Shown: positions 12,424-64,000 of the stretch, piece after piece | How the letters are laid out: each line of letters starts with the position of its first letter | Position numbering within the stretch: the stretch's first letter is position 1 | Assembly: GCA_002269645.1 (NCBI GenBank) | Contig: NIVC01000262.1 | Span: 310,001 to 374,000 of the forward strand | Direction: 5' to 3' | DNA length: 64,000 nt | Source: Macrostomum lignano | Taxonomy: Eukaryota | Position numbers and translations under genes: made by a program | The notes under the pieces: generated by a model | Database searches by the model: none | What the model was told of the DNA's origin: nothing | What the model saw: only the letters and a program-made list of their open reading frames with translations

Positions 12424-14805
12424 CTTCTATTTCACAAACGTTTGAGCTTTATTCAAATTGGCGCACTTTTTGTTTGTTATAATGATTGTCGTTTGGCTCT
12501 GTGGAGATATCATATGATTAGACATTGTTTTAAAAAGTGTTTCTGAACAACTAGATGATATCATGATGGGTTCTTAGCATAAAATTTTTAATTTGGTTGT
12601 ATAATATGAACAAATTCTGCTATAAAACTTGTATGAATTTGTTAATTCAAGGATAAGGTAACTTTTTGCCATAAGCACTGGATAGAAAACCCAAAGTATG
12701 ACTACAGGTTGGAGAAAGGGGGTGAGGGAATAAAGAAGAAAAGAGGAGAGAGGAGAAAGGAAATTAGAGATGAGAGAGAAAAGCACTAAAAAGAGATATA
12801 CACATTAATTGGGCTATATTGCTTTTTAAAGTTTTAAAAGACCTGTCAACTCTTAGGTTAAATGCTTACATTATTAGTGATTAGTCTATATTTTGGCTAA
12901 AACTTATTTGATAGGCTTGTAGTGCTGTATAGGCTATAGCTTTGCTTTATAAAATATGAAATATCAGTGTAACAGCAAAAAAATAGTTTTATATAATGAG
13001 GGCATTTTGACATTGCTATATAATCTATAATAATACAAAACCTATATAAATAGACTAGGTTCTATAAGTTATAATTTTATAAGCTATATAAAAATTCATT
13101 TTCATTGTGGCAACTTGAACTGTAACCCTCTTTTATACCAAATTTTATATTATGTTTTAAAGCTAAATACTAAATATTTTAATAATTTTATCATAGTAAT
13201 TATAATTATATTAAGTAATGACTACATTCTACAATTTTATTAATATAAACACAATTTTTTACACACAAATTTAGCTTCTTATTGCCTTAAGCTTATTTTA
13301 CCAACTTTCCAGTTTATTTTGATAGTATTTTTGTATTGTATGTCTTTATAGTATAAAGAGATTAAATTTATATATTTTGCATAAAGAATTATATGCTTTA
13401 TTCTACTTTTAAGGACCAAGTATGATTTTTAAAAGACATTTAAATAGACTATATTTTCACAAAGTCGTTTTATGCCATTATCATAATTTCAAAAAAATAA
13501 GTATTATATTTTTGAACATTGACACTCACAATCATACTGCGCTAAAAATATGTTTGGCTTCTACTTTCATATATATTTAAAAGCATTAAACGTGGAATAT
13601 ACTTTGCTTTCACTTTCACAATAGCAATTTAGATTTTAAACCATAGTCTATGTTATTAATATAAGAAGGCGCCTATCGACATGCAATTTTAGTTTCAGGA
13701 TAAGAATTATGATTTAGATAGAACATTAGGAGATGATGTGTCTAGGAAATGTTTATTAGCTTTTAATGTCAAAAGTTAACACGATAAACGATGCTACAAA
13801 ATATTAATCTAATCAGTGTTTAGGTTTTTTGTTAAATAGCTAGTCTTTTTCTTTATTTATCTTGAATTTTAAAAATATAAAGTAAGAAACTTAGGTAATT
13901 AATAAATTTGTTTTAAACTACAAACTTTTATTACTACCGGAGTTCTCTTTTTCTGCTAGAGATACTCGTTCACTTAAATCCTTAAGAAACTTTTTTCCAT
14001 CGTTATATATTCACTCGTTAAGTAATAGATCTTTGGCTTCGCTTTGTGGTTTCCATCATTAAAATGTAAATTTAAATGTATAGTGAGTATGTACATGTAC
14101 AGCTAGCTATATAATAGTATATTTTTTAGTTCGACAATATACATTGTGTTTTATATTGTCAAAGTTACATATGTGTAACTTTGCGTTCTTAAACAGTGAC
14201 ACTGCAGTGAGCCACGTTTTCCGAGAAGATTCAAAGGTCCACATGGTATAGGTATTGATGAGGACGCACTTTTTTTCAAATCCCGCGCTAGCACTGGGCT
14301 CTAAACTTACTAGCCTATACTAACAGTGGGCAATGGGCATTTTTATCTTTTTTTCTGCAAATTGTCATAGAATCTATACTAGATATAATGTTTGGTCATA
14401 CTAGTAGTCATAATAACATAGGCGCAGCTTTTTGGGTCATAAATCATCGCTTTCGAAGCTGGTCTGACAGCCACCTGCTGCGCCTCACTCAGTGTTGAAG
14501 CGGGCGCCAGATGGTCTGAGAGGATGCGGGCGGTAGCTTTTTTCTCATCATTTTGACAGGCCATCAAGATTTATGAGGTCAGAGCCTATTGTTCGGGTTC
14601 ACTCAAGCGTGTGACAGCTAGCTTTGACAGCTATGCATTTTACCCCTAAAAATACTTTGGGATTAGCGATTAGTGATTTCTCTTCATTATCTTCTCTTTC
14701 TATTTAATAAGAGCTTTCTAATGTATATTTTTCCATTTTTTGTCAATTCTACGCGAAAAGTCATAAATCATTTTGTTGCGATTTTGATTGATTTATGACA
14801 GCACC

Positions 14806-21619: not shown

Positions 21620-21895
21620 AGAAACGGACCAATCAAAGCTATCCTGATTGCTTCAAGCGGCTGCTACCTGATTGAGGCTGCCGGAGCCAGAGGAGGCAGC
21701 AACACCTTGACGAGCACCACAGGTGGCCCAGGAGCCCAGGTGAGCGCCAGAGTCAACCTAGCTGACAGCCGACACCCAACTGTGCACCGTTGGGGGCCAG
21801 ACGGCCGGGCGGCTCGACCTCCCTGGACTACGAAGTCGGCGGCGGAAGCGGCCGCAGTTTCGTGTATCGGACGAACAACCAGGCAACTCCTTAGG
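21620..21895 (+). pseudogene. Frameshifted fragment of an ALK/LTK-type glycine-rich domain gene
   Basis: SSGCYLIEAAGARGGSNTLTSTTGGPGAQVSARVNL, continuing in other frames as TQLCTVGGQ and DYEVGGGSGRSFVYRT, then TAG. At least two frameshifts. Confidence 0.6.
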
Positions 21896-44934: not shown

Positions 44935-47290
44935 AATTTGTGTCAGTAGATTAATAACTTGTGTCAGTAGATTAATGATTTGTGTCAGTGGGTTTATGAT
45001 TTGTGTCAGTAGATTTTTATTTGTGTCAGTAGGTTTATGATTTGTGTTAGTAAAGTAATGATTTATGTCAGTAGGTTTATGAATTGTGTCAGTAAATTAA
45101 TGATTTGTGTCAGTAGGTTTATGAATTGTGTCAGTAAAGTAATGATTTGTGTCAGTAGGTTTATGAATTGTGTCAGTAAATTAATGATTTGTGTCAGTAG
45201 GTTTATGATTTGTGTCAGTAAAGTAATGATTTGTGTCAGTAGGTTTATGAATTGTGTCAGTAAATTAATGATTTGTGTCAGTAAAGTAATGATTTGTGTC
45301 AGTAGGTTTATGAATTGTGTCAGTAAATTAATGATTTGTGTCAGTAAAGTAATGATTTGCGTCAGTAGTTTATGATTTGTGTCAGTAAAGTAAGGATTTA
45401 TGTCAGTAAAGTAATGGTTTGTGTCAGTAAGTTTATGATTTGTGTCAGTAAAGTAATTATTTGTGTCAGTAGGTTTATGAATTGTGTCAGTAAAGTAATG
45501 ATTTGTGTCAGTAAAGTAATGATTTGTGTCAGTAAAGTAATGATTTGTGTCAGTAAAGTAATTATTTGTGTCAGTAGGTTTATGAATTGTGTCAGTAAAT
45601 TAATGATTTGTGTCAGTAGGTTTATGATTTGTGTCAGTAAAGTAATGATTTGCGTCAGTAGTTTATGATTTGTGTCAGTAAAGTAATGATTTGTGTCAGT
45701 AAGTTTATGATTTGTGTCAGTAAAGTAATTATTTGTGTCAGTAGGTTTATGAATTGTGTCAGTAAATTAATGATTTGTGTCAGTAGGTTTATGATTTGTG
45801 TCAGTAAAGTAATGATTTGTGTCAGTAGGTTTATGAATTGTGTCAGTAAATTAATGATTTGTGTCAGTAGGTTTATGAATTGTGTCAGTAAATTAATGAT
45901 TTGTGTCAGTAGGTTTATGAATTGTGTCAGTAAATTAATGATTTGTGTCAGTAAAGTAATGATTTGTGTCAGTTGTTTATGATTTGTGTCAGTAAAGTAA
46001 GTATTTATGTCAGTAGGTTTATGATTTGTGTCAGTAAAGTAATGATTTGTGTCAGTAGGTTTATGAATTGTGTCAGTAAATTAATGATTTGTGTCAGTAA
46101 AGTAATGATTTGTGTCAGTAGTTTATGATTTGTGTCAGTAAAGTAATGATTTGTGTCAGTAAAGTAAGGATTTATGCCAGTAAAGTAATGGTTTGTGTCA
46201 GTAAATTAATGATTTGTGTCAGTAGGTTTATGATTTGTGTCAGTAAAGTAATGATTTGTGTCAGTAGGTTTATGATTTGTGTCAGTAAAGTAATGATTTG
46301 TGTCAGTAGGTTTATGAATTGTGTCAGTAAATTAATGATTTGTGTCAGTAAAGTAATGATTTGTGTCAGTTGTTTATGATTTGTGTCAGTAAAGTAAGGA
46401 TTTGTGTCAGTAAAGTAATGATTTGTGTCAGTAAAGTAAGGATTTATGTCAGCAAAGTAATGATTTGTGTCAGTAAAGTAATGATTTATGTCAGTAAAGT
46501 AATGATTTGTGTCAGTAAAGTAATGATTTGTGTCAGTAGTTTATGATTTGTGTCAGTAAAGTAATGATTTGTGTCAGTAGGTTTATGAATTGTGTCAGTA
46601 AATTAATGATTTGTGTCAGTAAATTAATGATTTGTGTCAGTAAAGTAATGATTTGCGTCAGTAGTTTATGATTTGTGTCAGTAAAGTAAGGATTTATGTC
46701 AGTAAAGTAATGGTTTGTGTCAGTAAGTTTATGATTTGTGTCAGTAAAGTAATTATTTGTGTCAGTAGGTTTATGAATTGTGTCAGTAAAGTAATGATTT
46801 GTGTCAGTAAAGTAATGATTTGTGTCAGTAAAGTAATGATTTGTGTCAGTAAAGTAATTATTTGTGTCAGTAGGTTTATGAATTGTGTCAGTAAATTAAT
46901 GATTTGTGTCAGTAGGTTTATGATTTGTGTCAGTAAAGTAATGATTTGTGTCAGTAGGTTTATGAATTGTGTCAGTAAATTAATGATTTGTGTCAGTAAA
47001 GTAATGATTTGTGTCAGTTGTTTATGATTTGTGTCAGTAAAGTAATAATTTATGTCAGTAAAGTAATGATTTGTGTCAGTAAAGTAATGATTTGTGTCAG
47101 TAGTTTATGATTTGTGTCAGTAAAGTAATGATTTGTGTCAGTAAAGTAAGGATTTATGTCAGTAAAGTAATGATTTGTGTCAGTAAAGTAATAATTTGTG
47201 TCAGTAAAGTAATAATTTATGTCAGTAGAGTAATGATTTGTGTTATTAGAGTAATGATTTGTGTTATTAGAGTAATGGTTTGTGTCAATC
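44935..47290. repeat. 21-bp minisatellite ATGATTTGTGTCAGTAAAGTA, >100 copies, after the last BRCA2 exon
   Basis: Direct reading. Confidence 0.95.
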
Positions 47291-47491: not shown

Positions 47492-50400
47492 CTAAAAAAT
47501 CGTGATGCTCTTCTTCAAGTTCGCCTCAGCGATTCGATGCAGCACTTCTTTGAACAGGGGCTTCATGCTGTCAATGTCTATGGCCGTGATGAGGTGCGTG
47601 TAGATTCTCTTGGACTTTGGCATGTTCTTCGGTATGAGGCTGGTGAACTTCTCTTTGATGTACTGCGCGCACTGGTTCACCTCGTCGTGGCCTGGAGATT
47701 GAGGACGATTGAGGAGGATCAAACTTGATGTCTCGATTCTGTTTGTTCGTTGTTCCCTATATTAAGGCGATTTTCTCATATATTCAGGGCGATTTTCTTA
47801 GATAATCAGGGCGATTTTGATGGATAATCAGGGCGATTTTGATGGATAATCAGGGCGATTTTGATGGATAATCAGGGCGATTTTGATGGATAATCAGGGC
47901 GATTTGCTTGGATAATCAGGGCGATTTTGATGGATAATCAGGGCGATTTTGATGGATAATCAGGGCGATTTTGATGGATAATCAGGGCGATTTTGATGGA
48001 TAATCAGGGCGATTTGCTTGGATAATCAGGGCGATTTTGATGGATAATCAGGGCGATTTTGATGGATAATCAGGGCGATTTTGATGGATAATCAGGGCGA
48101 TTTTGATGGATAATCAGGGCGATTTTGATGGATAATCAGGGCGATTTTGATGGATAATCAGGGCGATTTTGATGGATAATCAGGGCGATTTTGATGGATA
48201 ATCAGGGCGATTTGCTTGGATAATCAGGGCGATTTTGATGGATAATCAGGGCGATTTTGATGGATAATCAGGGTGATTTGCTTGGATAATCAGGTCGATT
48301 TTCCTGGATAATCAAGGTGATTTGCTTGGATAACCAGGGGCGATTTCTCTGAAACATCTCACCTCGATAGTCCGGAAACAGTCCTGTAATACTCTTGGAC
48401 TTCAACTTCTGCTCGAACACGTCCAATTTGTTTAAGAACAGAAAGAAATCCTTCTTCCACAGGTACTTGTTGCTGATGATCTCGCTGAATGTTGATAGAC
48501 AGTCGGACATTTTAATTGTCTGGAGAATGTACAGATGGATTGTCTGTTTATGACATGATTTATGATGATCAATGATTTAGAAAGACGTGCGTGGTTTCTC
48601 ACCGTTCTGTCCTCCTCTTCGACAAGCTCGCCGAAGCCAGACAGAGAGCTGACGAATAGCACTGCGTTGACGTCTTCGAAATAGTGAATCCACTTGTGCC
48701 GCTGGCTTCTCTGGCCTGCCAGATCGATCATGCTGTCGTTTTGAATGAAAATTGGGCGGATTTTTATTGCAGATAAATTGATTGACTTGGCTGATGATAT
48801 CCAGATGTGATGAAAAAGCCAAGGAGGTCGGACACAGATAGACAGGGGGTGCGCACAGATAGGGGTGTACACAGATAGACAGGAGGTGTACACAGATAGA
48901 CAGGGGTGTACACAGATAGACAGGGGGTGTACACAGATAGACAGGGGGTGTACACAGATAGACAGGGATGTACACAGATAGACAGGGGTGTACACAGATA
49001 GACAGGGGTGTACACAGATAGGGGGTGTACACAGATAGGGGGTGTACACAGATAGACAGGGGGTGTACACAGATAGACAGGGGGTGTACACAGATGATTC
49101 AGATTCAAGGAGGTGGACACAAAACATTTTAGGGAGTTGAATTTAGGGAATTTAGGGAAACAGACACATTGGAGGCTGGGAGGTGGACACAGCGGATGCA
49201 AAAAGGTGGACTCAACAGCGACCGGGAAATGGACACAACAGCGACAGAGAGCCGGACACACACAGCGACAGAGAGCTGGACACACACAGCGACAGAGAGC
49301 TGGACACACACAGCGACAGGAAGATGGACATAACAGCGACAGAGAGGTAGAAACACACAGCGACAGGAAGATGAACACAACAGTGACAGGAAGATGGACA
49401 CAACAGTGACAGGAAGATGGACACAACAGTGACAGGAAGATGGACACAACAGTGACAGGAAGATGGACATAACAGCGACAGGAAGATTGACATAACAGCG
49501 ACAGAGAGGTGGACACACACAGCGACAGGAAGATGGACACAACAGTGACAGGAAGATGGACATAACAGCGACAGGAAGATGAACACAACAGTGACAGGAA
49601 GATGGACATAACAGCGACAGGAAGATGAACACAACAGTGACAGGAAGATGGACATAACAGCGACAGGAAGATGAACACAACAGTGACAGGAAGATGGACA
49701 CAACAGTGACAGGAAGATGGACACAACAGTGACAGGAAGATGGACATAACAGCGACAGGAAGATTGACATAACAGCGACAGAGAGGTGGACACACACAGC
49801 GACAGGAAGATGGACACAACAGTGACAGGAAGATGGACATAACAGCGACAGGAAGATGAACACAACAGTGACAGGAAGATGGACATAACAGCGACAGGAA
49901 GATGAACACAACAGTGACAGGAAGATGGACATAACAGCGACAGGAAGATGAACACAACAGTGACAGGAAGATGGACACAACAGTGACAGGAAGATGAACA
50001 CAACAGTGACAGGAAGATGGACACAACAGTGACAGGAAGATGGACATAACAGCGACAGGAAGATGGACATAACAGCGACAGAGAGGTGGACACAGCGGAT
50101 GCAAAGAGGTGGACACAACAGTGACAGGAAGGTGGACACAGCGGATGCAACGAGGTGGACACAGCAGCGACCAGTAAATGGACACTACAGCGACAGGGAG
50201 GTGGACAAAGCGAGTACAAAGAGGTGGACACAGAAGCGACAGGAAAGTAGACACAGAACATTCTGCATCCGCTTTAAGCTCACCGAAAAGTGGTGCCAGC
50301 AATTTGAAATTCGGTCTGTCTGACTGCGTCGCTCGGCTTGCGAATGGCCAAAATATCTTGCAGCGTTGGCACATAGTCCTCTTGAATGACGCGATCCACG

Positions 50401-53400
50401 TGTTGTATAAAGCTGTAGATTTATTTAGATTGGTGATCTTTATTTTACAGAGCCTTAAACATTTTAGTAAGTTTTTAGTGTTTTAAGTTAAAATTGTCGC
50501 TAACTTGAAAACTGTAATCAGACTGATGTTGAATCACCCTTTAGGGCAATGAGAATCACACTTTAGGGCAATGAGAATCACACTTTAGGGCAATGAGAAT
50601 CACACTTTATGACAATGAGAATTACATTTTATGGCAATGAGAATCACCCTTTAGGGCAATGAGAATCACACTTTAGGGCAATGAGAATCACACTTTATGA
50701 CAATGAGAATCACACTTTAGGGCAATGAGAATCACCCTTTAGGGCAATGAGAATCACACTTTAGGGCAATGAGAATCACACTTTATGACAATGAGAATCA
50801 CACTTTAGGGCAATGAGAATCACACTTTATGACAATGAGAATCACACTTTAGGGCAATGAGAATCACCCTTTAGGGCAATGAGAATCACACTTTAGGGCA
50901 ATGAGAATGACACTTTAGGGCAATGAGAATGACACTTTAGGGCAATGAGAATCACACTTTATGGCAATGAGAATCACACTTTAGGGCAATGAGAATGACA
51001 CTTTAGGGCAATGAGAATGACACTTTAGGGCAATGAGAATCACACTTTAGGGCAATGAGAATCACACTTTAGGGCAATGAGAATCACACTTTAGGGCAAT
51101 GAGAATCACACTTTAGGGCAATGAGAATCACACTTTATGGCAATGAGAATCACACTTTAGGGCAATGAGAATCACACTTCAGAGCAATGAGAATGACACT
51201 TTAGGGCAATGAGAATGACACTTTAGGGCAATGAGAATCACACTTTATGGCAATGAGAATCACACTTTAGGGCAATGAGAATGACACTTTAGGGCAATGA
51301 GAATCACACTTTAGGGCAATGAGAATGACACTTTAGGGCAATGAGAATGACACTTTAGGGCAATGAGAATGACACTTTAGGGCAATGAGAATCACACTTT
51401 AGGGCAATGAGAATCACACTTTAGGGCAATGAGAATCACACTTTATGGCAATGAGAATCACACTTTAGGGCAATGAGAATCACACTTTAGGGCAATGAGA
51501 ATCACACTTTAGGGCAATGAGAATCACACTTTAGGGCAATGAGAATCACACTTTAGGGCAATGAGAATCACACTTTAGGGCAATGAGAATCACACTTTAG
51601 GGCAATGAGAATCACATTTTATGGCAATGAGAATCACCCTTTAGGGCAATGAGAATCACACTTTAGGGCAATGAGAATCACACTTTATGACAATGAGAAT
51701 CACACTTTAGGGCAATGAGAATCACCCTTTAGGGCAATGAGAATCACACTTTAGGGCAATGAGAATCACACTTTATGACAATGAGAATCACACTTTAGGG
51801 CAATGAGAATCACACTTTATGACAATTAGAATCACACTTTAGGGCAATGAGAATCACCCTTTAGGGCAATGAGAATCACACTTTAGGGCAATGAGAATGA
51901 CACTTTAGGGCAATGAGAATGACACTTTAGGGCAATGAGAATCACACTTTATGGCAATGAGAATCACACTTTAGGGCAATGAGAATGACACTTTAGGGCA
52001 ATGAGAATGACACTTTAGGGCAATGAGAATCACACTTTAGGGCAATGAGAATCACACTTTATGGCAATGAGAATCACACTTTAGGGCAATGAGAATCACA
52101 CTTTAGGGCAATGAGAATCACACTTTATGGCAATGAGAATCACACTTTAGGGCAATGAGAATCACACTTCAGGGCAATGAGAATGACACTTTAGGGCAAT
52201 GAGAATGACACTTTAGGGCAATGAGAATCACACTTTAGGGCAATGAGAATGACACTTTAGGGCAATGAGAATGACACTTTAGGGCAATGAGAATCACACT
52301 TTATGGCAATGAGAATGACACTTTAGGGCAATGAGAATGACACTTTAGGGCAATGAGAATGACACTTTAGGGCAATGAGAATCACACTTTAGGGCAATGA
52401 GAATCACACTTTAGGGCAATGAGAATCACACTTTATGGCAATGAGAATCACACTTTAGGGCAATGAGAATCACACTTTAGGGCAATGAGAATCACACTTT
52501 AGGGCAATGAGAATCACACTTTAGGGCAATGAGAATCACACTTTAGGGCAATGAGAATCACACTTTAGGGCAATGAGAATCACACTTTAGGGCAATGAGA
52601 ATCACACTTTATGGCAATGAGAATCACACTTTAGGGCAATGAGAATCACACTTTAGGGCAATGAGAATCACACTTTATGGCAATGAGAATCACACTTTAG
52701 GGCAATGAGAATCACACTTTAGGGCAATGAGAATCACACTTTAGGGCAATGAGAATCACACTTTAGGGCAATGAGAATCACACTTTAGGGCAATGAGAAT
52801 CACACTTTAGGGCAATGAGAATCACACTTTAGGGCAATGAGAATCACACTTTAGGGCAATGAGAATCACACTTATGGCAATGAGAATCACACTTTAGGGC
52901 AATGAGAATCACACTTTAGGGCAATGAGAATCACACTTTATGGCAATGAGAATCACACTTTAGGGCAATGAGAATCACACTTTAGGGCAATGAGAATCAC
53001 ACTTTAGGGCAATGAGAATCGCTGCCCTACTGAACTAGTCACTATTGAATATAAAAAAACAGATTAACAATCAAGAGGACAGCTAGACTGTCGGTCAGAC
53101 CCTCTAAAAACAAACGAAGTAACTCACTACATCTCGGCGTAGGTAATCTCCGGCTTGAAGTACTCGTGATCAGCGAGGCACAATTCGAACTCCGGCTGCA
53201 CAATGCAGTTCTTTATGTGTCGCACGAAGCAGAACACGATTTCGTCGTGAGGCGGCAAGCCGTCCAGGGTTGACGAGGCGCGCCGACCTCCCGAGGAGCC
53301 GGTGTCGTGCGCGTCGCCTAGGTGAAGGTGCTCAACCAGCCTGGCGCAGCTGCTGTCGGAGCTGCCATCGTCCAGCTGGTTCAGTCCGGCATCCTCTCCG

Positions 53401-56400
53401 CTCAGGTTTTGCAGTTGTTGGCGTCTTTGACGTCTGGAGAATTTGCCAAATTCCAGACTGCTAATGTAGGTCCTGGCCGTGTGCGTCTCTCGCTCACGGT
53501 CTCGGTCGTCCGCTTCGGACTGGCTGTCCTCGAGGCCCTGCGGTGTTTTTATATATCGGATAGAAAGGACCTTGAGTTCAAATTTGTGTCCTTGAGCAAG
53601 ACACTTTACTCTGCATTGCTGCAGTTCACCCAGCTGTAAAATGGGTGCCAGTCCTTGGACTGAACAGCCGTACGCAGCCTTTAGAGGCGCCGGGCCGCGC
53701 TAAACAAGGACAAAAATGTGCATTCACATGCTTGAAATGACCTTATAGTTACATTAATTCACATTTATGAGGACCAAAATGTACTAAGATTTTAATGTGC
53801 GCTTGTACAATGACCTCATTTAACATGTAGAAGAAAACATGAAGTTCCATTTTTACAACTGAACAGATTGTAAACAGATTATCGATTTCGATTCTAACCT
53901 TCAACTATGCCTAATAAATTAAGTTGGTATGCAATTTATTAGATATTGATTTACGCTCGTAAAAGTTTAAGAGATGATGGATGTGATGAGAGAAGAGATG
54001 AGAAAGAAGATAAGAGGAGAGGAAATACTCGTAAGAAAGGAGATAAAAGGAGATAGGAGAGAGAATAGAAGAGGCTTTAAAGGAGAGATATGAGAAGACA
54101 CAAGGCTTGAGCCGGCCGAATTGCTATTTCAACCATCTCAAACTAAAACACATACTGGTTTTTTATAATCCCGTGGACTTCTTATTCTTTATCTATTTAA
54201 TACGATGCTCCAAAAAGACTCATCCGGTGAGACGCGTCTTTCTCACCTGCGTATTATAATAGATTATTAACGAAGCTGACGCCGTGTCGCCTCCGTTGCC
54301 GTCCCCACCCGAAGCCAGTCCGTCAAGTCCGTTCAAGTCTAAGTTGTTTCGCCTGGCCTCTCGGTAGCTAACATCGAATAACAGTAGTTCATGCGCGTTG
54401 TCGTGACCGCAACTGCTAGGCAGATCGGTGTCAGTCGGCGCCGATGCCAGCGTATCGTCGTCCACAAAATCAACGTGCGCGTAGTGAATGCTGTTCTCAA
54501 TGTCCACTTGTTTGCCGGAGTGGCGAAATATTTGACTGTTGAATTTCGGACAGTAGGCTTGGAATTCTTCAACCATGTCCTGGTTGGGTGCGCGATTAAC
54601 AATGGTCTTACATCTCCGTGTGAGTTGCATTCCATGCGGGGCCACAGAATTCGTGTCTGGTGTATGAATATTTGCCTGGGGCTTGTTCAAGAGAACCAAC
54701 TCCAAAACCCTGGCACTGAGGAAGTGAGCCCTTGAATTTTTGCGGTTCCCTAAAGCCACAGCTACACAAGTACAGAGACATGAGGGGCGCACTAAAGATG
54801 CACTGCAGCCCCGACTTTGTCTGCCATGGGTCGAGCAAAAATATCCCAATATGTGGATTCAAATTTGATGTAGCTACGCCTGGAATCGAGCGAAAGCCTT
54901 CTGGCCCAAGTCCTCTGATAGATAATTTCTAGAATTTCGAAAAAGTCCCTTTGACCAACAACAGCTGCAATCAAACTTTGATGTAGAATAAAAAACCGCT
55001 ACCTTCCTACCTTGATGTAGGGATCGTGAAACCAGATGTCCCTAGTGCGCATATTCTCCAGCACAATGTGCACCGCATCTGCTAGATTCTCCAGCACCTG
55101 ACCGATCAGCGCCTTGCGTTGCTCGTCCGGGAATGCGTCTCCGTAGTGAATTCGAAACTGTTTCACTAACGTACTCTTGCCGCATCCGTTGCCGCCTAAG
55201 TTAATGTCAAAAAGTGAAATCTGGATTAAACGTTAATATACGTTTTGGTTGAAAAAAACTTGGCAGTTAAAAAATCTAAAGGAATAGCGCTATGTAACGG
55301 ATAATATGAATGAATACTGTCATTTTAATTTCATAAAATTAAACTTAAATTAAACTTCAGCATAAACTTAAACTTAATAGTGAGACACTCTTTTATTGAT
55401 AGACACACTTATAGACTGTATACACATTTTAGCCTGTCGAGAGACGCACTACAGATGCCGTGAGACACGTTCCGAACTCTCAAAAGGGCACTTTAGACTG
55501 AGGTAAAAACACTTTGTCGAGAGACACACTTCAGATTGCGACAGACACACTTCATGCTGTGGTAGACACACTTCATGCTGTGGTAGACACACTTCAGGCT
55601 GTGGTAGACACACTTCAGGCTGTGGTAGACACACTTCAGGCTGTGGTAGACACTTCAGGATATGGTAATCACACTTCAGGATATGGTAGACACACTTCAG
55701 GATATGGTAGACACACTTCAGGCTGTGGTAGACACACTTCAGGCTGTGGTAGACACACTTCAGGCTGTGGTAGACACACTTCAGGCTGTGGTAGACACAC
55801 TTCAGGATATGGTAGACACACTTCAGGCTGTGGTAGACACACTTCAGGCTGTGGTAGACACACTTCAGGCTGTGGTAGACACACTTCAGGCTGTGGTAGA
55901 CACTTCAGGCTGTGGTAGACACACTTCAGGCTGTGGTAGACACACTTCAGGCTGTGGTAGACACACTTCAGGCTGTGGTAGACACACTTCAGGCTGTGGT
56001 AGACACACTTCAGGATATGGTAGACACACTTAAGACGTCGAGGTATTTGGAATTATTAGATGTTTAAGAAAGAAACTGTTTTAACGTGTGTCGTGTTGTA
56101 CTAGAGTAAAAAACAAACCAATCAGCAGCAGGTGAATCTCCTTGCGCTTGGCTTCCTGGTCAGTCAGCAACAGCTGGTCAATTTGCTTCGAACGCATCAG
56201 AGCCCTCTTCTGAGCCAGCTTGTTGATGCTGTTAAAATGATCCGATATCTGTAAGAAGTTTTGATGCGAGTTGAATAAGAGATCTCTAAGTCCTCAGCGG
56301 GTGTCTCTTGCGTGTACCCAGGTATCTGCCAACCAGACGTGAGTTGACGGGAGAAGGACTGTTTGGCGCTTTTTAAATCCTCTGCAGAAACCGGCTCGTA

Positions 56401-57798
56401 ACTCGAGCCGTCATCATTTCCTTAACACACTGAATTTGGCATTTCGCACTATAGATTGTTGGAATCGAAGAATAGGGAAGAAAACTACGAGCTAGTTGGT
56501 ATTCCCAACCACTACTCATTTTCCTAAGCACCCCACGCCGAATTTATTCCAATATATATTTGCTTATCTTCTAATCAAATATAGCTATAATGCGTGCCAT
56601 AACTCAAAATAGAAAATTTAGTACTGGATAATTGAATTTCAATCGCAATTAGGGAACAAGCGTTGTTATATGCTTATAAAAATATGCGCGTTTCCCATCC
56701 TTTTTTCATAGTCAATTTCTTTATCTCTTCTTCAGCATAATTGGGCGCCCCAATGTTCTATAGGGGAATTAATACGGCCGAGCAATTGATAGTTTTGAAA
56801 AAGAATTGTTTGATTGCAATCTTATTGACTTGTATTCATATTTGATCATTATTTATAGTTACAGTCGGCTACAGCTACCTACCAGTGATGAAATGACATT
56901 GAGAACTTATCCCTACTGACATCTCAACCTTCATCCCTAATGAAATCTCGTCTTTATTGATATTGAATCTCCACTGAGCTCTTATATTCACGGAAGTATA
57001 ATCTTTACCTTCACCTTAACTCTATTTCTTTCTCATGTTATCTACTAATATCTGATCTCTAGTGAGATCTCATCTCTACTATCATGGCATCTTCACTGAC
57101 AGCTTTTTATTACACCTGCCTTAATAGGCAGATGTAGCTCGTACAACCGGCCATTGTGGCACGCATCTGAAGGCTGTTTGCGGCTGTTGAGTCTAAAATC
57201 TGTGGTTTGCCATCGCCACACAAGCCCTCAATTACCCCAGGTAATGCTGTCATCCATTTTACAGCTGGGTGAACTGAAGCAATGCAGAGTTGAGGTGTCT
57301 TTCTCAAAGACACAAGTTGTTCCGAGTGGGTCGAGAACCGAATCCCCTAACCAGTAGGCTACAACCCCCCCCCCCTCTGCTTGATGCACATCTTGTGGCC
57401 TCCGATCTACTTACTTTTTTACTTGTGTGCCTCTTGGACGATGCGATAGCAACCAGACTGGCCTTCTTAGCCAGCACCCGTCTGCCTCCAGCCACTCCGC
57501 CGCTGCCGCTCCCGCCGCCACCATGGCTCGAAAATCTCTTGCTTCCGCCAATAACTGTACCGGCTCTTCTTAGCTTTCTCCTTCGCTTGTTGTTGCTGCT
57601 GCTGCTGTTTGAGGCTGCCGCTGGTGCCGATGCTGTTGCTGACAGTGCCGTAGTGACTGCAGCCGTCGATGAAGAAGTTGAAGCCTCCTCTACTATGGTA
57701 GCATCGATCGTGTCTCCTTGTGTCACCGTCGGCTTTTGCTGCTTCCATTCGTCGTCGTCTTTTGGTACGAGGCAGATTCGTTCCTCATTGTCGCTCAT
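47492..57798 (-). CDS. Atypical extra-large heterotrimeric G-protein alpha subunit (~750 aa)
   Basis: Exons 57798-57415, 56248-56119, 55195-55011, 54914-54816, 54675-54247, 53537-53128, 50412-50284, 48732-48603, 48519-48363, 47691-47492. Total 2253 nt with phases consistent; exons 1, 4 and 5 are less certain. Motifs RSKQID..KEIHLLLIG, GGNGCGKST, DYVPTLQDIL, DLAGQRSQRHKWIHYFEDV, LFLNKLD, FPDYRG, IYTHLITAID. AATAAA on minus at 47320-47325. Confidence 0.85.
47765..48345. repeat. 22-bp minisatellite GATAATCAGGGCGATTTTGATG (G-alpha last intron)
   Basis: Direct reading. Confidence 0.93.
48830..50240. repeat. Two adjacent minisatellites: 20-21-bp ACACAGATAGACAGGGGTGT (48830-49097) and 23-bp GACACAACAGTGACAGGAAGATG (49180-50240), G-alpha intron
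   Basis: Direct reading. Confidence 0.9.
50530..53020. repeat. 22-bp minisatellite GAGAATCACACTTTAGGGCAAT, ~110 copies (G-alpha intron)
   Basis: Direct reading. Confidence 0.95.
53568..53682 (+). mobile_element. CORE-SINE, 5'-truncated copy with internal deletion (in G-alpha intron)
   Basis: Shares TTTGTGTCCTT..CAAGACACTT..ACTCTGCATTGCT.CAGTTCACCCAGCTGTAAAATGGGTGCCAG and TCCTTGGACTGAACAGCCGTACGCA with the 58533 copy. Confidence 0.75.
55520..56030. repeat. 21-bp minisatellite GACACACTTCAGGCTGTGGTA (G-alpha intron)
   Basis: Direct reading. Confidence 0.92.
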
Positions 57799-60294: not shown

Positions 60295-63200
60295 TCACTT
60301 GACTGACAGCGGGTTTCTCTTAGTATTGGCCCTCTCGTTCGTCGGTCTCTGCCGATACTCCACCCCGATGCCGTCCACGACCGCCCGATTCTTGCGCGTC
60401 TCCGTCTGGCTCTCCTCGCCCAGAACCCGGCGACCCTCCTCGCTGACGACCTCCTGCGTGACCGTGAGAAGTTTCAGCATCTTATTAATCTTTAGAATTC
60501 TAGCCACCTCTTTGCAAGCTCTCGTGTCCATTGGCACCTGGCGTAAGAATAGCTTCTCAAGCTTGTTATTAATTTTCAGCGCTTCGGATAGAGAGAAGAA
60601 GCAGACATTGTCCAGGCGGATTCCGCTCAAATCCAGCAGGACAATGGTCCGATTGCTAGAGAATGCGGCGATGAAAGTGTTAAAGGCCATCGCATCAATC
60701 TTGAGGTTAGCCAAGATCAGGCCTTCTAGACTCTTGCTCTCCATCAGCTTTCCGTTGAGATCCTGCGATGCCACTATGCTCATCTGGCAGCCAGAAAAGT
60801 CTAGAATGCGCAGGTTGTCCGCAAATTTAGTTGGCAAATTTTTTATTATGCTTCCAACCAGCGACATGTGGTGACAATTTTGAAATGCGAACGTTTCTAG
60901 TTTAGTCATGTTCGAGCAGGCTTCGCGCATGTTGTTTAGCATTTTTGGCGACAACTGGTCCAGCTTCTTTCCTGACTCGTCGATGCACTCAAGATTCTTC
61001 AGATGAAAGCCGGTCTGATCGGGCTTCTTACGCCTGATTTCCATCTGGCCTGTAGAATTGGCGGGGTCCTCTGGCTCCGGACAGCACACGGTTTGAAGGA
61101 AGTCTGCCATTAGATCCTTCTCTGTCCAGTAGATGCGGAGCGTCTTGATGTGAACGTTCGTTTTCATTGCGGTAGCCAGACTTTTGTATGCCTCAAGCGT
61201 CTCTTTGGCTAGCAGATCTAGGCGCAAGTCCACCTCTTGGATGGTCGTGTGGTTAAACTTGATCATCTTGGACAGGCCTGTAAGCGACAATCTCGGAATG
61301 ATGCCCTCGTGCTTCACGGTGAATCGCTCTGGCAGCGATTCAACAATTTTCTTGCCAAGATCTCTGCGGGCCATGTCCATGACCGCCACGCATTCCAGAC
61401 TGAGCTGGTAGTCCATGATCTTGCCCTCGACCAGTTGACTGTCTTCTGGCGACGTAGCCGCTGGCATTTTCATGCGACTCGCTTTGCCTCGCCGTTTGTT
61501 ATACTGCAGTATCTTTGCAAACAGTTCCCGGGTGGCCGGCGTGTCGTTGTCCGACTTGCGGATGCTGCAGTAGAACACAACAACATTGTAGGAGATCGGA
61601 GTCATACTCATGTTCTGGAAGAAGCGGCTAGCTTCATCTGTTCCACTAGTGTCTAGATTTTTCGCGGCGAGATACTCTTGAATAAGACGATTGCCAAACA
61701 TGTAGCGCTGGTTATCCTCTGCGGTGAGGTTTGTAGCCAGTTGAATCAGGCCGAACTTAGTCATCATGTGGTCCTCCTTGGCCAAAATGAAAGTTGCGCT
61801 GCCTTTCTTTATGGTGTCCATAGCGCGTTCGGACAGCATTGCGTAGGCGCGATTCGCTTCGAAGCGACTCTCCTTTTCGCGTTCGATCAGCTTCAACTTG
61901 ATGCAGGAGACAAACTGTTCCACAATTGTTGTCGGAGAGTTCAGATCGATACTCATGCGCATGTCGGTCAGCAGGCAGAAGAACGAACAGTACAAAGGCA
62001 CCTGTGAGTAATGTCGCAGGGACGCTATTTTGCTTTGATTTGAATTTTCACCGTTTGAATCCTGTTGTTGCTGCTGATCGTTTCCTTGACCCTTGCTAGA
62101 GCTGCGGCTTAGTTTTGTGCTGACTTTGTCCGTGTTTTCCCTCTCCAAAGGTCGCTCGTCTCTGGGCTTTGCCGAGGTCACAGATGTCGCCGATTCTGAC
62201 GACCCGCGTCGCCTCTGCGGCTCCTGCGACTTTTTCGCTGCATCCAGCAGCTTTTGAAGCTCAGTTGATTTTTTTGCCACTACTAGCTTGTTTAGAAACG
62301 AGGAAAAGTGTTCCCACGGCTTCTTAGCTAGTTTGACGTACTTCTGAACGTACTCCTCTGCCTGGGATTTGGCGAATCCGGTCAGAATTACCTTGCGCTG
62401 GTAGCGGTGCATCAGTCTGACTGTAAAGTTAGTCTGACTAAATACCAGAATGTGCAGTTCCGGCATGATGTTCTCAAATAGCAAACTCTTCATCTCATCA
62501 TTTAGATTGTCTTCGTAGCCATCTATGATGAGCAGTGTGCTCGCCTGGTGCATGTTCATCACCTCCCAAATTTCGCGTTCGGCCAGCTTGCAGTCGCCTC
62601 CGAAAAGCTGTTCCATCATCATCACTTTCACTGTGGGCGCTGTTACTTTAAGATCAAGCAAGATTAGCAGTTGGAAAGGCCGTCCGAATACGTTTTCGTC
62701 CAAAGACCATTTGTAGGCCATATACTTAGCCAGCGTACTCTTCCCTGTTCCAGGGTCACCCTCAATAACTACTGTATGCGGGTCTTTTTCGCCTTCCTTA
62801 TAATCAAAAACTTGGAAGGCGTTGACTGACTTTCTGCAATTTTAAATTGAGAAATCAAAGTTGAAAATTATGTCTTGCTTAATGATCTGATCTGTTTTCC
62901 TGCTACTTACCCATTCAAATTGAGCAGCTGCTGTTGGCAGTAGAATTCGGCAATGTCTGTTTCAACTTTAGTGTACCATGGAATCGGATTCCATTTGGCG
63001 TACGCGGTGGAGTACCGCTCTCGAAGAATGTTGTTACAGTAAGGTAGACCCTCTGAAGAAACAGAAGAAACAGAAAAATCCTGTGATCAACTCTTAGAAG
63101 AGGATTTACTAATTATTATAAATACTTACGTGGTTTATTAGCAAGGATGTCGGCCTTAGCGGCCTGGTAGTCCTGGTGCATCTGCTGGTACACCTGTTCG

Positions 63201-63490
63201 TTCTTGGGTTTCAGCGATTCAACGAACTCATCCAACACATTGCCAGATTTTGGCACTAGAAAGTCGATCAACGTCGACATCTGCTCGTTGTTGCGCAGAG
63301 TAGAAAATATTTCCGTGCTCTCGTCTTGGGTAATAATCTCCTTGTTCATCAGATGCTCAACCACTGTGTCCGCTTTTACATCGTTGAGCAGCTGTTCGTA
63401 GTACTTGTCGAGAATTAGGCGCTCCGCTAATACCATGCCAGTTTTGATATGAGCCCATCTATGACAGCGCGACTTGTCGCTCATGTCCAT
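60295..63490 (-). CDS. NLR-family protein: CARD - NACHT NTPase - LRR
   Basis: Exons (>=63490)-63130, 63052-62911, 62833-60295; both introns are 77 bp GTAAGT..CAG. CARD-like helices (LLNDVKADTVVEHLMNKEIIT..MSTLIDFL), Walker A GDPGTGKST (62734-62760), Walker B LLIIDG, HD1 VPLYC, WHD FGNRLIQEYLAA, and C-terminal RI-like LRRs (LRILDFSGC, LEGLILANL, IVLLDLSGI, LEKLFLRQV). Confidence 0.9.
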
Positions 63491-64000
63491 CGTCGCCTTT
63501 CCAACAACCGACTGGCGTTTTTCGTTTCCGACGTGTCCAAATCGCGCGTCTTGAGCCGTTTCTGCAGAATAGGAATCTCTTCGCGCTTCTTCTTTCGTTC
63601 TTGGTTTTCGATTTCTCTCTTCAACTGGCTGACCTCTTGGCGGTACCAGACGAGGAATTCGCCCAGAATGAAGCGCGATTCAGTCTCGTCCATGCTAGTG
63701 TCCTGCTTGTATGCGTTCATACAGTCTGCTGCACCCGAGTGTCCCAGTCGCTGGAGCTGCTCGGCAATGCGGCTAAACAGTCTGTTAGCCGCGCTCGCCT
63801 TTAAGGTCTGCAGCGAGGCGAGCTCGCGTTGAATGCCCAGTAGGCGTTGCAGCGCTGCGCCCTGGCTGTCATCGCGAGGTTCCGGATCTCCCATCCAGCC
63901 GTTTGGCTGCGGCTTCGTCACATCGCAGGTGTATTTTACTAACAGGAGCAGCAGACGCAGGTCGTAGTTGTCAGCGGACACGGAAGATTTCTCCTTCGGG
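63481..64000 (-). CDS. DZIP3/hRUL138-like HEPN domain plus coiled coil; probable N-terminal part of the NLR gene, open to window edge
   Basis: Reads SADNYDLRLLLLLVKYTCDVTKPQPNGWMGDPEPRDDSQGAALQRL...FSRIAEQLQRLG. This fits the FDITLL..LRNIC..P..GW..P..D.S..ADI.R...I..AL.RLG pattern of HEPN_DZIP3. It ends in TGA overlapping the CARD ORF in the -1 frame, with no good frame-restoring intron. Confidence 0.7.
   Translation of the reverse strand, partial: PKEKSSVSADNYDLRLLLLLVKYTCDVTKPQPNGWMGDPEPRDDSQGAALQRLLGIQRELASLQTLKASAANRLFSRIAEQLQRLGHSGAADCMNAYKQDTSMDETESRFILGEFLVWYRQEVSQLKREIENQERKKKREEIPILQKRLKTRDLDTSETKNASRLLERRRWT

What the first reader, a model, noticed from the sequence alone, without database searches (positions are those of the whole stretch)
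53128..57798. Extra-large G-alpha: ~130-aa N-terminal extension and ~240-aa insertion in the helical domain
Seen: the spliced model gives ~750 aa versus ~350-390 for typical G-alpha. Three in-phase exons insert acidic and Ser/Gly-rich sequence between DPYIK-RTWARRL and LPPHDEIV..EITYAEMYFIQHVDRV. The N-terminus lacks Gly2 and has a basic KRRRKLRR patch and Cys9. Established: yeast Gpa1 has a ~110-aa regulatory helical insert, and XLalphas and plant XLGs have N-terminal extensions. Inference: a new lineage-specific XL G-alpha class with a scaffold or regulatory insert, possibly nuclear.
Basis: partly seen in the sequence, partly recalled or inferred. Interest (0 to 1): 0.7.

Follow-up and report, generated by a model that had tools for sequence, protein, structure and literature searches.

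The report
Oversized divergent flatworm G-protein alpha gene
This is an intact but very divergent G-protein alpha-subunit gene of the flatworm Macrostomum lignano; it probably carries a lineage-specific, seemingly unstructured insert of about 175-245 residues (depending on the splice model) in its helical domain and perhaps a long N-terminal extension, but the exact exon boundaries and its expression still need RNA evidence.

Summary
The sequence facts hold. It is a G-alpha by Pfam (7.7e-79) and by PDB matches (Go/Gi/Gq, 2e-49).

Two UniProt fragments from Macrostomum lignano identify the organism. One is 100% identical to the window. Both contain the large insert exon E5 spliced to E6, so the core of the insert has independent support. 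They use other E6 acceptors (53519 and 53393, not 53537). One fragment starts at an AG inside E5 (54579).

Exon E4 (54914-54816) has no coding signal and no outside support. All splice variants stay in frame (568-750 aa), so the net insert is about 175-245 aa.

The insert has no homologue outside this species among 1.84 billion representative proteins, no Pfam domain and no confident fold.

The N-terminal extension rests on ORF and donor evidence only. A rival is spliced-leader trans-splicing onto E2, because the leader ends in AUG and would be in frame.

GTP-binding motifs are kept but atypical (P-loop GGNGCGKS, switch I RKPSDAV).

Verdict: a real, lineage-specific variant of a known family. 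"New class" and "nuclear" are unsupported.

The parts
57415..57798 (-). E1: putative first coding exon. It gives a 128-aa Ser/Ala/Gly-rich, basic N-terminal extension (MSDNEERIC...; KRRRKLRR at aa 71-78). Unverified.
   Evidence: An ATG with A at -3 opens 128 codons that end at a strong donor, AAA|GTAAGT. Codon bias is +0.35 bits/codon in aa 1-40 and drops to -0.60 just after the donor. No outside model covers it. The rival is SL trans-splicing at E2.
56119..56248 (-). E2: alphaN helix up to LLLIG. It corresponds to ancestral G-alpha exon 1 without its start codon.
   Evidence: tblastn to GNAI1 aa 10-40 and PDB alignments. The acceptor cTTACAG|ATA fits the M. lignano trans-splice motif YTNCAG. 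There is no in-frame ATG before M146.
55011..55195 (-). E3: P-loop (GGNGCGKS) and helix alphaA. Its 185 nt equals a fused Gi exon 2+3, as in the Gq-type structure.
   Evidence: This part scores best against Gq (49-50 bits) versus Gi (38-42 bits).
54816..54914 (-). Doubtful.
   Evidence: It is in phase (99 nt), but codon bias is -0.27 with no frame preference, the donor GTCGGG is weak and no public model contains it. The only hint is FESTYWD against Gq FENPYVD, p=0.03 uncorrected.
54247..54675 (-). E5: the main insert exon. Its 5' border is uncertain: 54675 (reader) or 54579 (where the public model starts, right after an AG).
   Evidence: It lies in a 212-codon open frame and ends at a strong donor, CAG|GTGAGA. 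P0003 is 100% identical over aa 33-143 and continues into E6; P0004 is 91% identical. Codon bias is +0.20 for aa 33-143 and -0.09 for aa 1-32.
53128..53537 (-). E6: the rest of the insert plus helices alphaC to alphaE. Candidate acceptors are 53537 (reader), 53519 (P0003) and 53393 (P0004).
   Evidence: The P0003 junction reads ...IIYYNTQ|SEADD and the P0004 junction ...IIYYNTQ|DAGLNQ. Codon bias in the insert part is 0.33-0.36. Pfam and PDB alignments resume at aa 515-519.
50284..50412 (-). E7: helices alphaE-alphaF and switch I (LAIRKPSDAV).
   Evidence: tblastn to GNAI1 155-197. Its 129 nt matches the Gi/Gq exon size (from my memory).
48603..48732 (-). E8: switch II (DLAGQRSQRHKWIHYFE).
   Evidence: tblastn E=3e-15; 130 nt.
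48363..48519 (-). E9: the NKLD (G4) region.
   Evidence: tblastn; model.
47492..47691 (-). E10: the G5 motif (ITAID), helix alpha5 and the stop codon TAG.
   Evidence: tblastn; model.

Best explanation
The locus is an intact, fast-evolved paralogue of a Gi/o/q-type heterotrimeric G-protein alpha subunit in the neopolyploid flatworm Macrostomum lignano.

It keeps the ancestral exon skeleton. E2 corresponds to old exon 1, E3 is a fused 185-nt exon, and E7-E10 are 129/130/157/200 nt. The one ancestral exon that encodes helices alphaB to alphaD (about 155-158 nt) has grown to about 600-940 nt. It is now split into at least two exons, E5 (or its shorter form E5') and E6.

This places a lineage-specific, acidic (net charge about -17), Asp/Ser/Gly-rich and probably disordered segment, about 175-245 aa in net length, between helix alphaA and helix alphaC.

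Inferred function. The Ras-like core can still bind guanine nucleotide: GxxxxGKS, the catalytic Arg and Gln, DxxGQ and NKxD are all present. Asn at the Gi Gly42 position, and Asp-Ala at the Thr182-Gly183 positions, predict slow hydrolysis and poor RGS sensitivity. The insert would hang as a flexible loop from the tip of the helical domain, near the RGS/GoLoco-facing surface. There it could act as a docking or modification platform, in the way the yeast Gpa1 insert does.

If exon E1 is used, the protein lacks the usual lipid-anchor motif. It might instead use its polybasic patch for membrane or nuclear targeting.
For: Shown:
- G-alpha identity.
- An intact 10-exon open reading frame with canonical splice sites.
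- Exon sizes and phases matching the Gi/Gq skeleton (the 8-versus-7-exon statement is from PMC5896119; the exon lengths are from my memory).
- Two public M. lignano gene models contain E5 spliced to E6.
- Frame-specific codon bias in E5 aa33-143 and in the E6 insert part.
- No canonical exon-4 copy hidden in the introns.
- No homologue of the insert outside M. lignano, no Pfam domain, and no repeat of it within the window.
- Single-sequence AlphaFold2 models of the two insert exons reach mean pLDDT of only 36.7 and 44.0.
- Motif states can be read directly from the alignments.

Inferred from the literature:
- The alphaA-alphaC region tolerates change. Gpa1 has a 109-aa insert (PMC10312744), EhGalpha1 lacks alphaB (PMC3499586), and Galpha-s has an alphaB-alphaC insert close to the RGS interface (PMC12505447).
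Against: - No transcript evidence was available. The two UniProt fragments come from annotation of the error-prone ML2 assembly (REAPR scores 31.9% of its bases error-free; PMC5730564). P0003 ends at an internal GT inside a clearly coding exon, so its borders are not trustworthy.
- No public protein in the searched collections covers the conserved exons E2-E4 or E7-E10. The gene may therefore be weakly expressed or unannotated.
- The low pLDDT values come from single sequences and isolated exons, so they are weak evidence of disorder.
- Helix alphaB could not be located, so the insertion point (alphaA-alphaB or alphaB-alphaC) is unresolved.
- All functional statements are inference.
Confidence: 0.6

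Rival explanations
1. The mRNA contains E4, the full 143-codon E5 and E6 starting at 53537, giving a 750-aa protein with a net insert of about 245-260 aa.
For: All pieces are in frame with AG/GT borders. The E5 reading frame stays open 93 codons upstream of the P0003 start. E4 begins exactly at the conserved intron position and shows FESTYWD against Gq FENPYVD. The well-supported E2 donor is just as weak as the E4 donor.
Against: E4 and E5 aa1-32 show no coding bias. Both public models use other E6 acceptors, and P0003 starts at the internal AG at 54579. No public model contains E4.
Confidence: 0.15
2. There is no extra-large N-terminus. The mRNA is SL trans-spliced at the E2 acceptor, and the leader's terminal AUG starts translation in frame (M-ISDHFNSINKLAQKRALMRSKQ...). 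This gives a near-canonical alphaN length. E1 would then be outron, or part of another transcript.
For: The M. lignano spliced leader ends in ...TTGCATG. About 30% of genes are trans-spliced (PMC8629364; 38.8% in the Mlig_RNA_3_7_DV1 annotation, PMC5730564), and the acceptor motif is YTNCAG (PMC8629364). The E2 acceptor is TTACAG and E2 starts in phase 0. E2 corresponds to ancestral exon 1 but has no ATG of its own before M146.
Against: E1 offers an ATG, 128 open codons and a near-consensus donor in the right phase. Its coding bias stops exactly at that donor. An upstream cis donor normally outcompetes trans-splicing (principle quoted in PMC8629364).
Confidence: 0.3
3. The insert exons are skipped. 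E3 splices directly to E6 (568 aa or fewer), or the main isoform is close to normal size.
For: E3-to-E6 is in frame. E6 alone contains everything that can be aligned to alphaC-alphaE. The P0004 model shows that acceptor choice within E6 is flexible.
Against: Both public models include E5. E5 aa33-143 has frame-specific coding bias and a consensus donor. Even the shortest variant keeps about 85 aa between alphaA and alphaC, where Gi has about 20-25.
Confidence: 0.1
4. The gene is a decaying or silent duplicate in a neopolyploid genome. The 'insert' would then be neutral expansion of a relaxed exon, not a functional module.
For: The genome is highly redundant (PMC5730564; PMC10733133). Catalytic motifs are atypical. 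No public protein model covers the conserved exons. The P0004 copy differs by what looks like a compensated frameshift.
Against: There is no stop codon or frameshift in any of the 10 exons, all splice sites are canonical, and core codon bias (0.45-0.48 bits/codon) equals that of a neighbouring gene. The key residues Lys/Ser (P-loop), Arg, Gln, NKxD and helix alpha5 are kept.
Confidence: 0.15

Closest known systems
Metazoan Gi/o and Gq/11 alpha subunits (GNAI/GNAO/GNAQ)
   Same: The Pfam G-alpha domain is present. PDB best hits are Go/Gi (172/168 bits) and Gq (165 bits). The N-terminal part is most Gq-like. The exon skeleton is 185/129/130/157 nt with conserved phases. GxxxxGKS, Arg, DxxGQ, NKxD and helix alpha5 are conserved.
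   Different: Identity over the alignable core is only about 30-40%. The P-loop is GGNGCGKS, switch I is RKPSDAV, and G5 is TAI instead of CAT. There is no MGxxxS lipidation motif. The segment between alphaA and alphaC is about 198-269 aa instead of about 20-25.
Yeast Gpa1 ubiquitination domain (109-110-aa insert in the helical domain)
   Same: It is a large, non-conserved insert in the N-terminal part of the helical domain of an otherwise normal G-alpha. It is the natural model for a regulatory or trafficking module.
   Different: No sequence similarity: the exhaustive search with E5 did not find fungal proteins. The present insert is about twice as long, it is split by at least one intron, and ubiquitination is untested. 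The Gpa1 insert is described as not found outside fungi (PMC10312744).
XL-alpha-s (GNAS XL exon) and plant extra-large G proteins (XLG)
   Same: A long N-terminal extension is joined to a G-alpha core. There is a basic, NLS-like patch, as in XLGs, and atypical catalytic residues, as in XLGs.
   Different: E1 has no Pfam domain apart from a sub-threshold low-complexity match and was not compared directly with XL-alpha-s or XLG sequences. There is no Cys-rich region (Cys9 is the only cysteine). E1 joins the equivalent of ancestral exon 1 rather than replacing it. The extension itself is unverified. XL-alpha-s and XLGs are known for N-terminal extensions, not for a large helical-domain insert.
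Planarian unclassified G-alpha-x1 and G-alpha-like genes (Schmidtea mediterranea)
   Same: These are flatworm G-alpha paralogues that fall outside the standard families (PMC10078920).
   Different: None is reported as extra-large. The motifs KWIHYFE, DLAGQ and GCGKS are absent from that paper's supplementary sequences, so no orthology is evident.

Membership tests
Heterotrimeric G-protein alpha subunit (Pfam PF00503) | Profile match above the curated threshold | tested here: met
   265.7 bits against a 48.8 cut-off, E=7.7e-79, in two stretches. 360 PDB G-alpha sequences match, the best at 2e-49.
Heterotrimeric G-protein alpha subunit (Pfam PF00503) | G1-G5 nucleotide-binding motifs plus the catalytic Arg (switch I) and Gln (switch II) | tested here: met
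   GGNGCGKS (172-179), R571 in AIRKPSDAV, DLAGQ (592-596), NKLD (662-665) and TAI in ITAID (719-723). Deviations, in Gi1 numbering: G42N, E43G, T181S, T182D, G183A, G202A, C325T.
Heterotrimeric G-protein alpha subunit (Pfam PF00503) | All-helical domain inserted between G1 and switch I | tested here: inconclusive
   Helices alphaA and alphaC-alphaF align. Helix alphaB could not be assigned to any segment (shuffle tests). A full-length structure prediction was not possible.
Heterotrimeric G-protein alpha subunit (Pfam PF00503) | N-terminal lipidation motif (Gly2 myristoylation and/or Cys palmitoylation near the N-terminus) | tested here: not met
   The E1 model starts MSDNEERIC and the SL-AUG model starts MISDHF; neither has Gly2. 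An unverified mini-exon, MAGCTSYICLLRQ, lies in intron 1.
Heterotrimeric G-protein alpha subunit (Pfam PF00503) | Binding to G-beta-gamma and coupling to GPCRs | not testable with these tools
   Only the conservation of alphaN, switch II and the alpha5 C-terminus (...ANLKKSITIF) can be noted.
Gq/11 class | Seven-coding-exon structure with exons 2 and 3 fused, and grouping with Gq in a phylogeny | tested here: inconclusive
   E3 is a single 185-nt exon, consistent with the 7-exon preGNAQ type against the 8-exon preGNAI type (PMC5896119). The N-terminal part scores best with Gq, but the whole protein scores slightly better with Go/Gi. No phylogeny was run.
Plant XLG-type extra-large G protein | N-terminal domain with an NLS and a Cys-rich region, fused to a G-alpha-like domain | tested here: not met
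   E1 has a basic patch but only one Cys, and no Pfam domain apart from a sub-threshold low-complexity match. The exon's use is unverified.
Gpa1-type helical-domain insert (ubiquitination domain) | Homologous insert of about 109 aa in the helical domain that is ubiquitinated | tested here: not met
   The position is analogous, between alphaA and alphaC. The exhaustive search with exon E5, the main insert exon, found only M. lignano proteins; the E6 part of the insert was scanned against Pfam only. Ubiquitination cannot be tested here.

The most novel reading that the evidence does not exclude
Macrostomum has evolved an animal counterpart of the plant XLG and yeast Gpa1 solutions. It would be a non-lipidated, slow-GTPase, RGS-insensitive G-alpha. 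A basic N-terminal extension and an acidic disordered module of about 200 aa in the helical domain would turn the switch into a scaffold, possibly independent of receptors or active in the nucleus. This would be the first large helical-domain insert described in a metazoan G-alpha.
Probability: 0.15. Interest if true: 0.65.

Novelty: new variant of a known kind. Interest (0 to 1): 0.45.

Why it matters
Animal G-alpha subunits are unusually uniform in size (about 350-390 aa). Their known helical-domain inserts are 20 aa or fewer (Galpha-s, PMC12505447), and the 109-aa Gpa1 insert is described as confined to fungi (PMC10312744). An expressed metazoan G-alpha with an insert of roughly 175-245 aa would show that the alphaA-alphaC region of the helical domain is a general evolutionary 'landing pad' for regulatory modules. 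M. lignano has working transgenesis (PMC5730564), which would make such a module testable in an animal. On a practical level, this gene appears to be unannotated as a G-alpha: the only public fragments carry unrelated automatic names. G-protein inventories of flatworms would therefore miss it.

Tried and rejected
1. The search for homologous proteins with the full 750-aa model returned nothing. The candidate list was swamped by low-complexity words, because the 100%-identical P0003 was missed. This result is uninformative rather than negative.
2. The same tool with the C-terminal 248 aa found only two distant G-alphas at 31-37% identity. With aa 106-171 plus 185-341 it found only P0003. So no public model covers the conserved exons or E4.
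I did not try to get round this and used single exons taken exactly from the window instead.
4. The metagenome scan found no relative. The look-up of encoding contigs had no record for P0003.
5. Rfam and tRNA scans of the window were empty.
6. I tried to place helix alphaB by local alignment with shuffling. No segment was significant after allowing for 20 tests. MAFFT and HMM alignments disagree on where alphaC lies (versus 8 and 9), and I followed the HMM alignments.
7. A 32-nt 'mini-intron' (GTAAGA...CAG) just upstream of 54579 was considered and rejected, because it breaks the frame.
8. A weak tblastn hit at 21640-21848 (+) was checked and is chance.
9. A transposon or repeat origin for the insert was rejected. 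There is no second copy in the window, no Pfam domain and no outside homologue.
10. The Wasik et al. 2015 genome paper was not available, so how the UniProt fragments were predicted remains unknown.
Full report
**Observation.** Ten exons with AG/GT borders give a 2253-nt coding sequence and a 750-aa protein with no internal stop.
- The finding's coordinates (53128-57798) cover only exons E1-E6. Four further exons (50412-50284, 48732-48603, 48519-48363, 47691-47492) complete the gene.
E4 (99 nt) and E5 (429 nt) are in phase. DPYIK is followed by RTWARRL. LPPHDEIV...EITYAEMY/FIQHVDRV is present. The N-terminus is MSDNEERIC with KRRRKLRR at aa 71-78.

**Identity.** Pfam G-alpha (PF00503) matches at 7.7e-79.
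- PDB sequences of Go, Gi, Gz and Gq match at 2e-49 to 4e-46. They match in two blocks: query 141-229 to Gi 9-97, and query 519/541-745 to Gi 128/149-350.
- About 290 residues of the model therefore stand where Gi has about 30.
- The N-terminal block alone scores best with Gq (49-50 bits against 38-42 for Gi). The whole protein scores marginally better with Go/Gi (172 against 165 bits).
- The gene is therefore Gi/o/q-like, and its class is unresolved.

**Gene skeleton.**
- E7-E10 measure 129, 130, 157 and 200 nt. E3 is 185 nt.
- From my memory of GNAI/GNAQ gene structure these correspond to the conserved 129/130/154/last exons, and to a fused 43+142-nt exon.
- Lokits et al. report eight coding exons for preGNAI and seven for preGNAQ, differing at exon 2/3 (PMC5896119).
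- The E3 donor falls at the position of the conserved intron before helix alphaB.
- tblastn with GNAI1, GNAQ and two distant homologues finds only E2, E3 and E7-E10. No canonical copy of that exon is hidden in the introns.

**Are the insert exons real?**

Intrinsic evidence:
- E5 lies in a 212-codon open frame and E6 in a 190-codon open frame.
- I trained a codon-usage score on the conserved core plus the neighbouring NACHT open frame. It gives 0.45-0.48 bits/codon for the core, 0.33-0.36 for the insert part of E6 and 0.20 for E5 aa33-143, always best in the proposed frame.
- The same score gives -0.09 for E5 aa1-32, -0.41 upstream of the E5 acceptor, and -0.27 for E4 with no frame preference.
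- Splice-site scores do not discriminate. Well-supported exons also have weak acceptors, and the secure E2 donor (GTTTGT) is as weak as the E4 donor (GTCGGG).

External evidence:
- An exhaustive phmmer search of 1.84 billion representative proteins with E5 found four hits. Two are real.
- P0003 (188 aa) is 100% identical to E5 aa33-143.
- P0004 (109 aa, 91% identical) joins ...IIYYNTQ|DAGLNQLDD, an acceptor at 53393.
- Both are UniProt entries of Macrostomum lignano (A0A1I8FYY4 and A0A1I8F7R4).
- So independent gene models contain E5 spliced to E6.

Caveats:
- These are annotation models, not transcripts.
- P0003 begins exactly after an AG (54579). It ends at a GT inside an exon that must continue, because alphaC to alphaE follow in the same frame.
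- The ML2 assembly they probably derive from is error-prone (PMC5730564).
- No public protein covers E2-E4 or E7-E10.
- Every combination of these borders is in frame, giving 750, 744, 712, 679, 637 or 568 aa.
- My best estimate is E3 to E5' (54579) to E6 (53519), giving 679 aa. E4 remains possible (712 aa).

**Organism and context.**
- The window is M. lignano, a neopolyploid flatworm. More than half of its genome is repetitive and 15% is simple and tandem repeats (PMC5730564; PMC10733133).
- This explains the 21-23-nt minisatellites that fill most introns of this gene. It also explains a 91%-identical second copy.

**N-terminus.**
- E1 offers an ATG with A at -3, then 128 open codons and a near-consensus donor (AAA|GTAAGT) in phase with E2. 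Its coding bias (+0.35 in aa 1-40) collapses to -0.60 immediately after the donor.
- E2, the equivalent of ancestral exon 1, has no ATG of its own before M146.
- There is a specific rival. The M. lignano spliced leader ends in ATG, about 30% of genes are trans-spliced, and the acceptor motif is YTNCAG (PMC8629364).
- The E2 acceptor is TTACAG and E2 begins in phase 0. SL-AUG plus E2 would encode M-ISDHFNSINKLAQKRALMRSKQ..., an alphaN of nearly canonical length.
- A 13-codon mini-exon, MAGCTSYICLLRQ with a CAG|GTGTAA donor, also lies in intron 1.
- Only reads can decide between these options.

**Nature of the insert.**
- It has no Pfam domain.
- E5, its main exon, has no homologue outside M. 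lignano.
- It has no second copy in the window.
- Its composition is D 12%, S 12%, L 10%, G 9%, with net charge -17.
- Single-sequence AlphaFold2 runs on E5 and on E6 from 53519 gave mean pLDDT of 36.7 and 44.0. They show only low-confidence helices, among them DMVEEFQAY at the P0003 start and PHDEIVFCFVRHIKNCI, which is alphaC.
- This is compatible with disorder but is weak evidence.
- Helix alphaB could not be assigned.

**Predicted biochemistry (inference).** Motif changes relative to Gi1:

| Motif | Gi1 | This protein |
|---|---|---|
| P-loop (G1) | GAGESGKS | GGNGCGKS |
| Switch I | RVKTTGI | RKPSDAV |
| Switch II | DVGGQ | DLAGQ |
| G4 | NKKD | NKLD |
| G5 | TCAT | ITAI |

- The Lys/Ser of the P-loop, the arginine finger, the catalytic Gln and the guanine-specificity Asp are kept. 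Nucleotide binding is therefore expected.
- A non-Gly residue at Gi Gly42 and the loss of Thr182-Gly183 predict slow hydrolysis and RGS insensitivity. This rests on established knowledge of G42 and G183 mutants; see also PMC3285607 (listed, abstract only).

**Comparison with what is known.**
- Gpa1 carries a 109-aa insert in the helical domain that directs ubiquitination and trafficking. It is described as absent outside fungi (PMC10312744).
- EhGalpha1 lacks alphaB altogether (PMC3499586).
- The helical-domain inserts of Galpha-s are 20 aa or fewer, and its alphaB-alphaC loop lies next to the RGS interface (PMC12505447).
- Planarians have an unclassified G-alpha-x1 and ten truncated G-alpha-like genes (PMC10078920). 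None is reported as extra-large, and the motifs of this protein are absent from that paper's supplements.
- XL-alpha-s and plant XLGs share only the idea of an N-terminal extension.

**Verdict.**
- This is a real, intact and very divergent G-alpha gene. A large lineage-specific insertion in its helical domain has partial independent support.
- The exact size (about 637-750 aa), exon E4, the N-terminal extension and any function remain open.
- It is a new variant of a known kind, not a demonstrated new class.
- I rate it of moderate interest.

Noticed in passing
window 60298-63999 (-): The upstream neighbour looks like an invertebrate NLR-type gene. It has a HEPN_DZIP3 domain (63484-63999), a CARD (63119-63679) and a NACHT domain inside an 848-codon single open frame (60298-62841).
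   Followed up: partly
window 9676-12426 (-): Exons encoding uDENN and DENN domains, from a MADD/DENND-like gene.
   Followed up: partly
window 44936-47287, 47780-48346, 48822-50207, 50531-53020, 55522-56031: Minisatellites with units of about 21-23 nt fill introns 2, 6, 7 and 9 of the G-alpha gene. A 2.35-kb array begins about 200 nt after its stop codon, and one array holds 113 copies at 95% identity. Similar arrays recur across the window.
   Followed up: partly
window 57215-57345 (-) and 53575-53705 (+): A SINE-like element with a core of about 70 nt occurs in intron 1 and, in the opposite orientation, in intron 5. The core is about 90% identical between the two copies.
   Followed up: partly
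P0003 / P0004 (UniProt A0A1I8FYY4, A0A1I8F7R4), corresponding to window 54579-53291: The public fragments are named 'TLDc domain-containing protein' and 'Peptidase_S8 domain-containing protein'. A Pfam scan of the same window sequence finds no domain, so the names look like annotation artefacts. P0004 differs from the window by HELLLFDVSY to HGTTNYSIY, which looks like a compensated frameshift or an assembly error.
   Followed up: partly
window 57116-57154 (-): Intron 1 contains a 13-codon open frame, MAGCTSYICLLRQ, ending at CAG|GTGTAA in phase with E2. It could be an alternative short first exon with a Gi-like Gly-Cys start, or it could be chance.
   Followed up: no
window 56249-56254 (-): The E2 acceptor TTACAG fits the M. 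lignano SL trans-splice acceptor motif. The leader's terminal ATG would be in frame with E2.
   Followed up: partly
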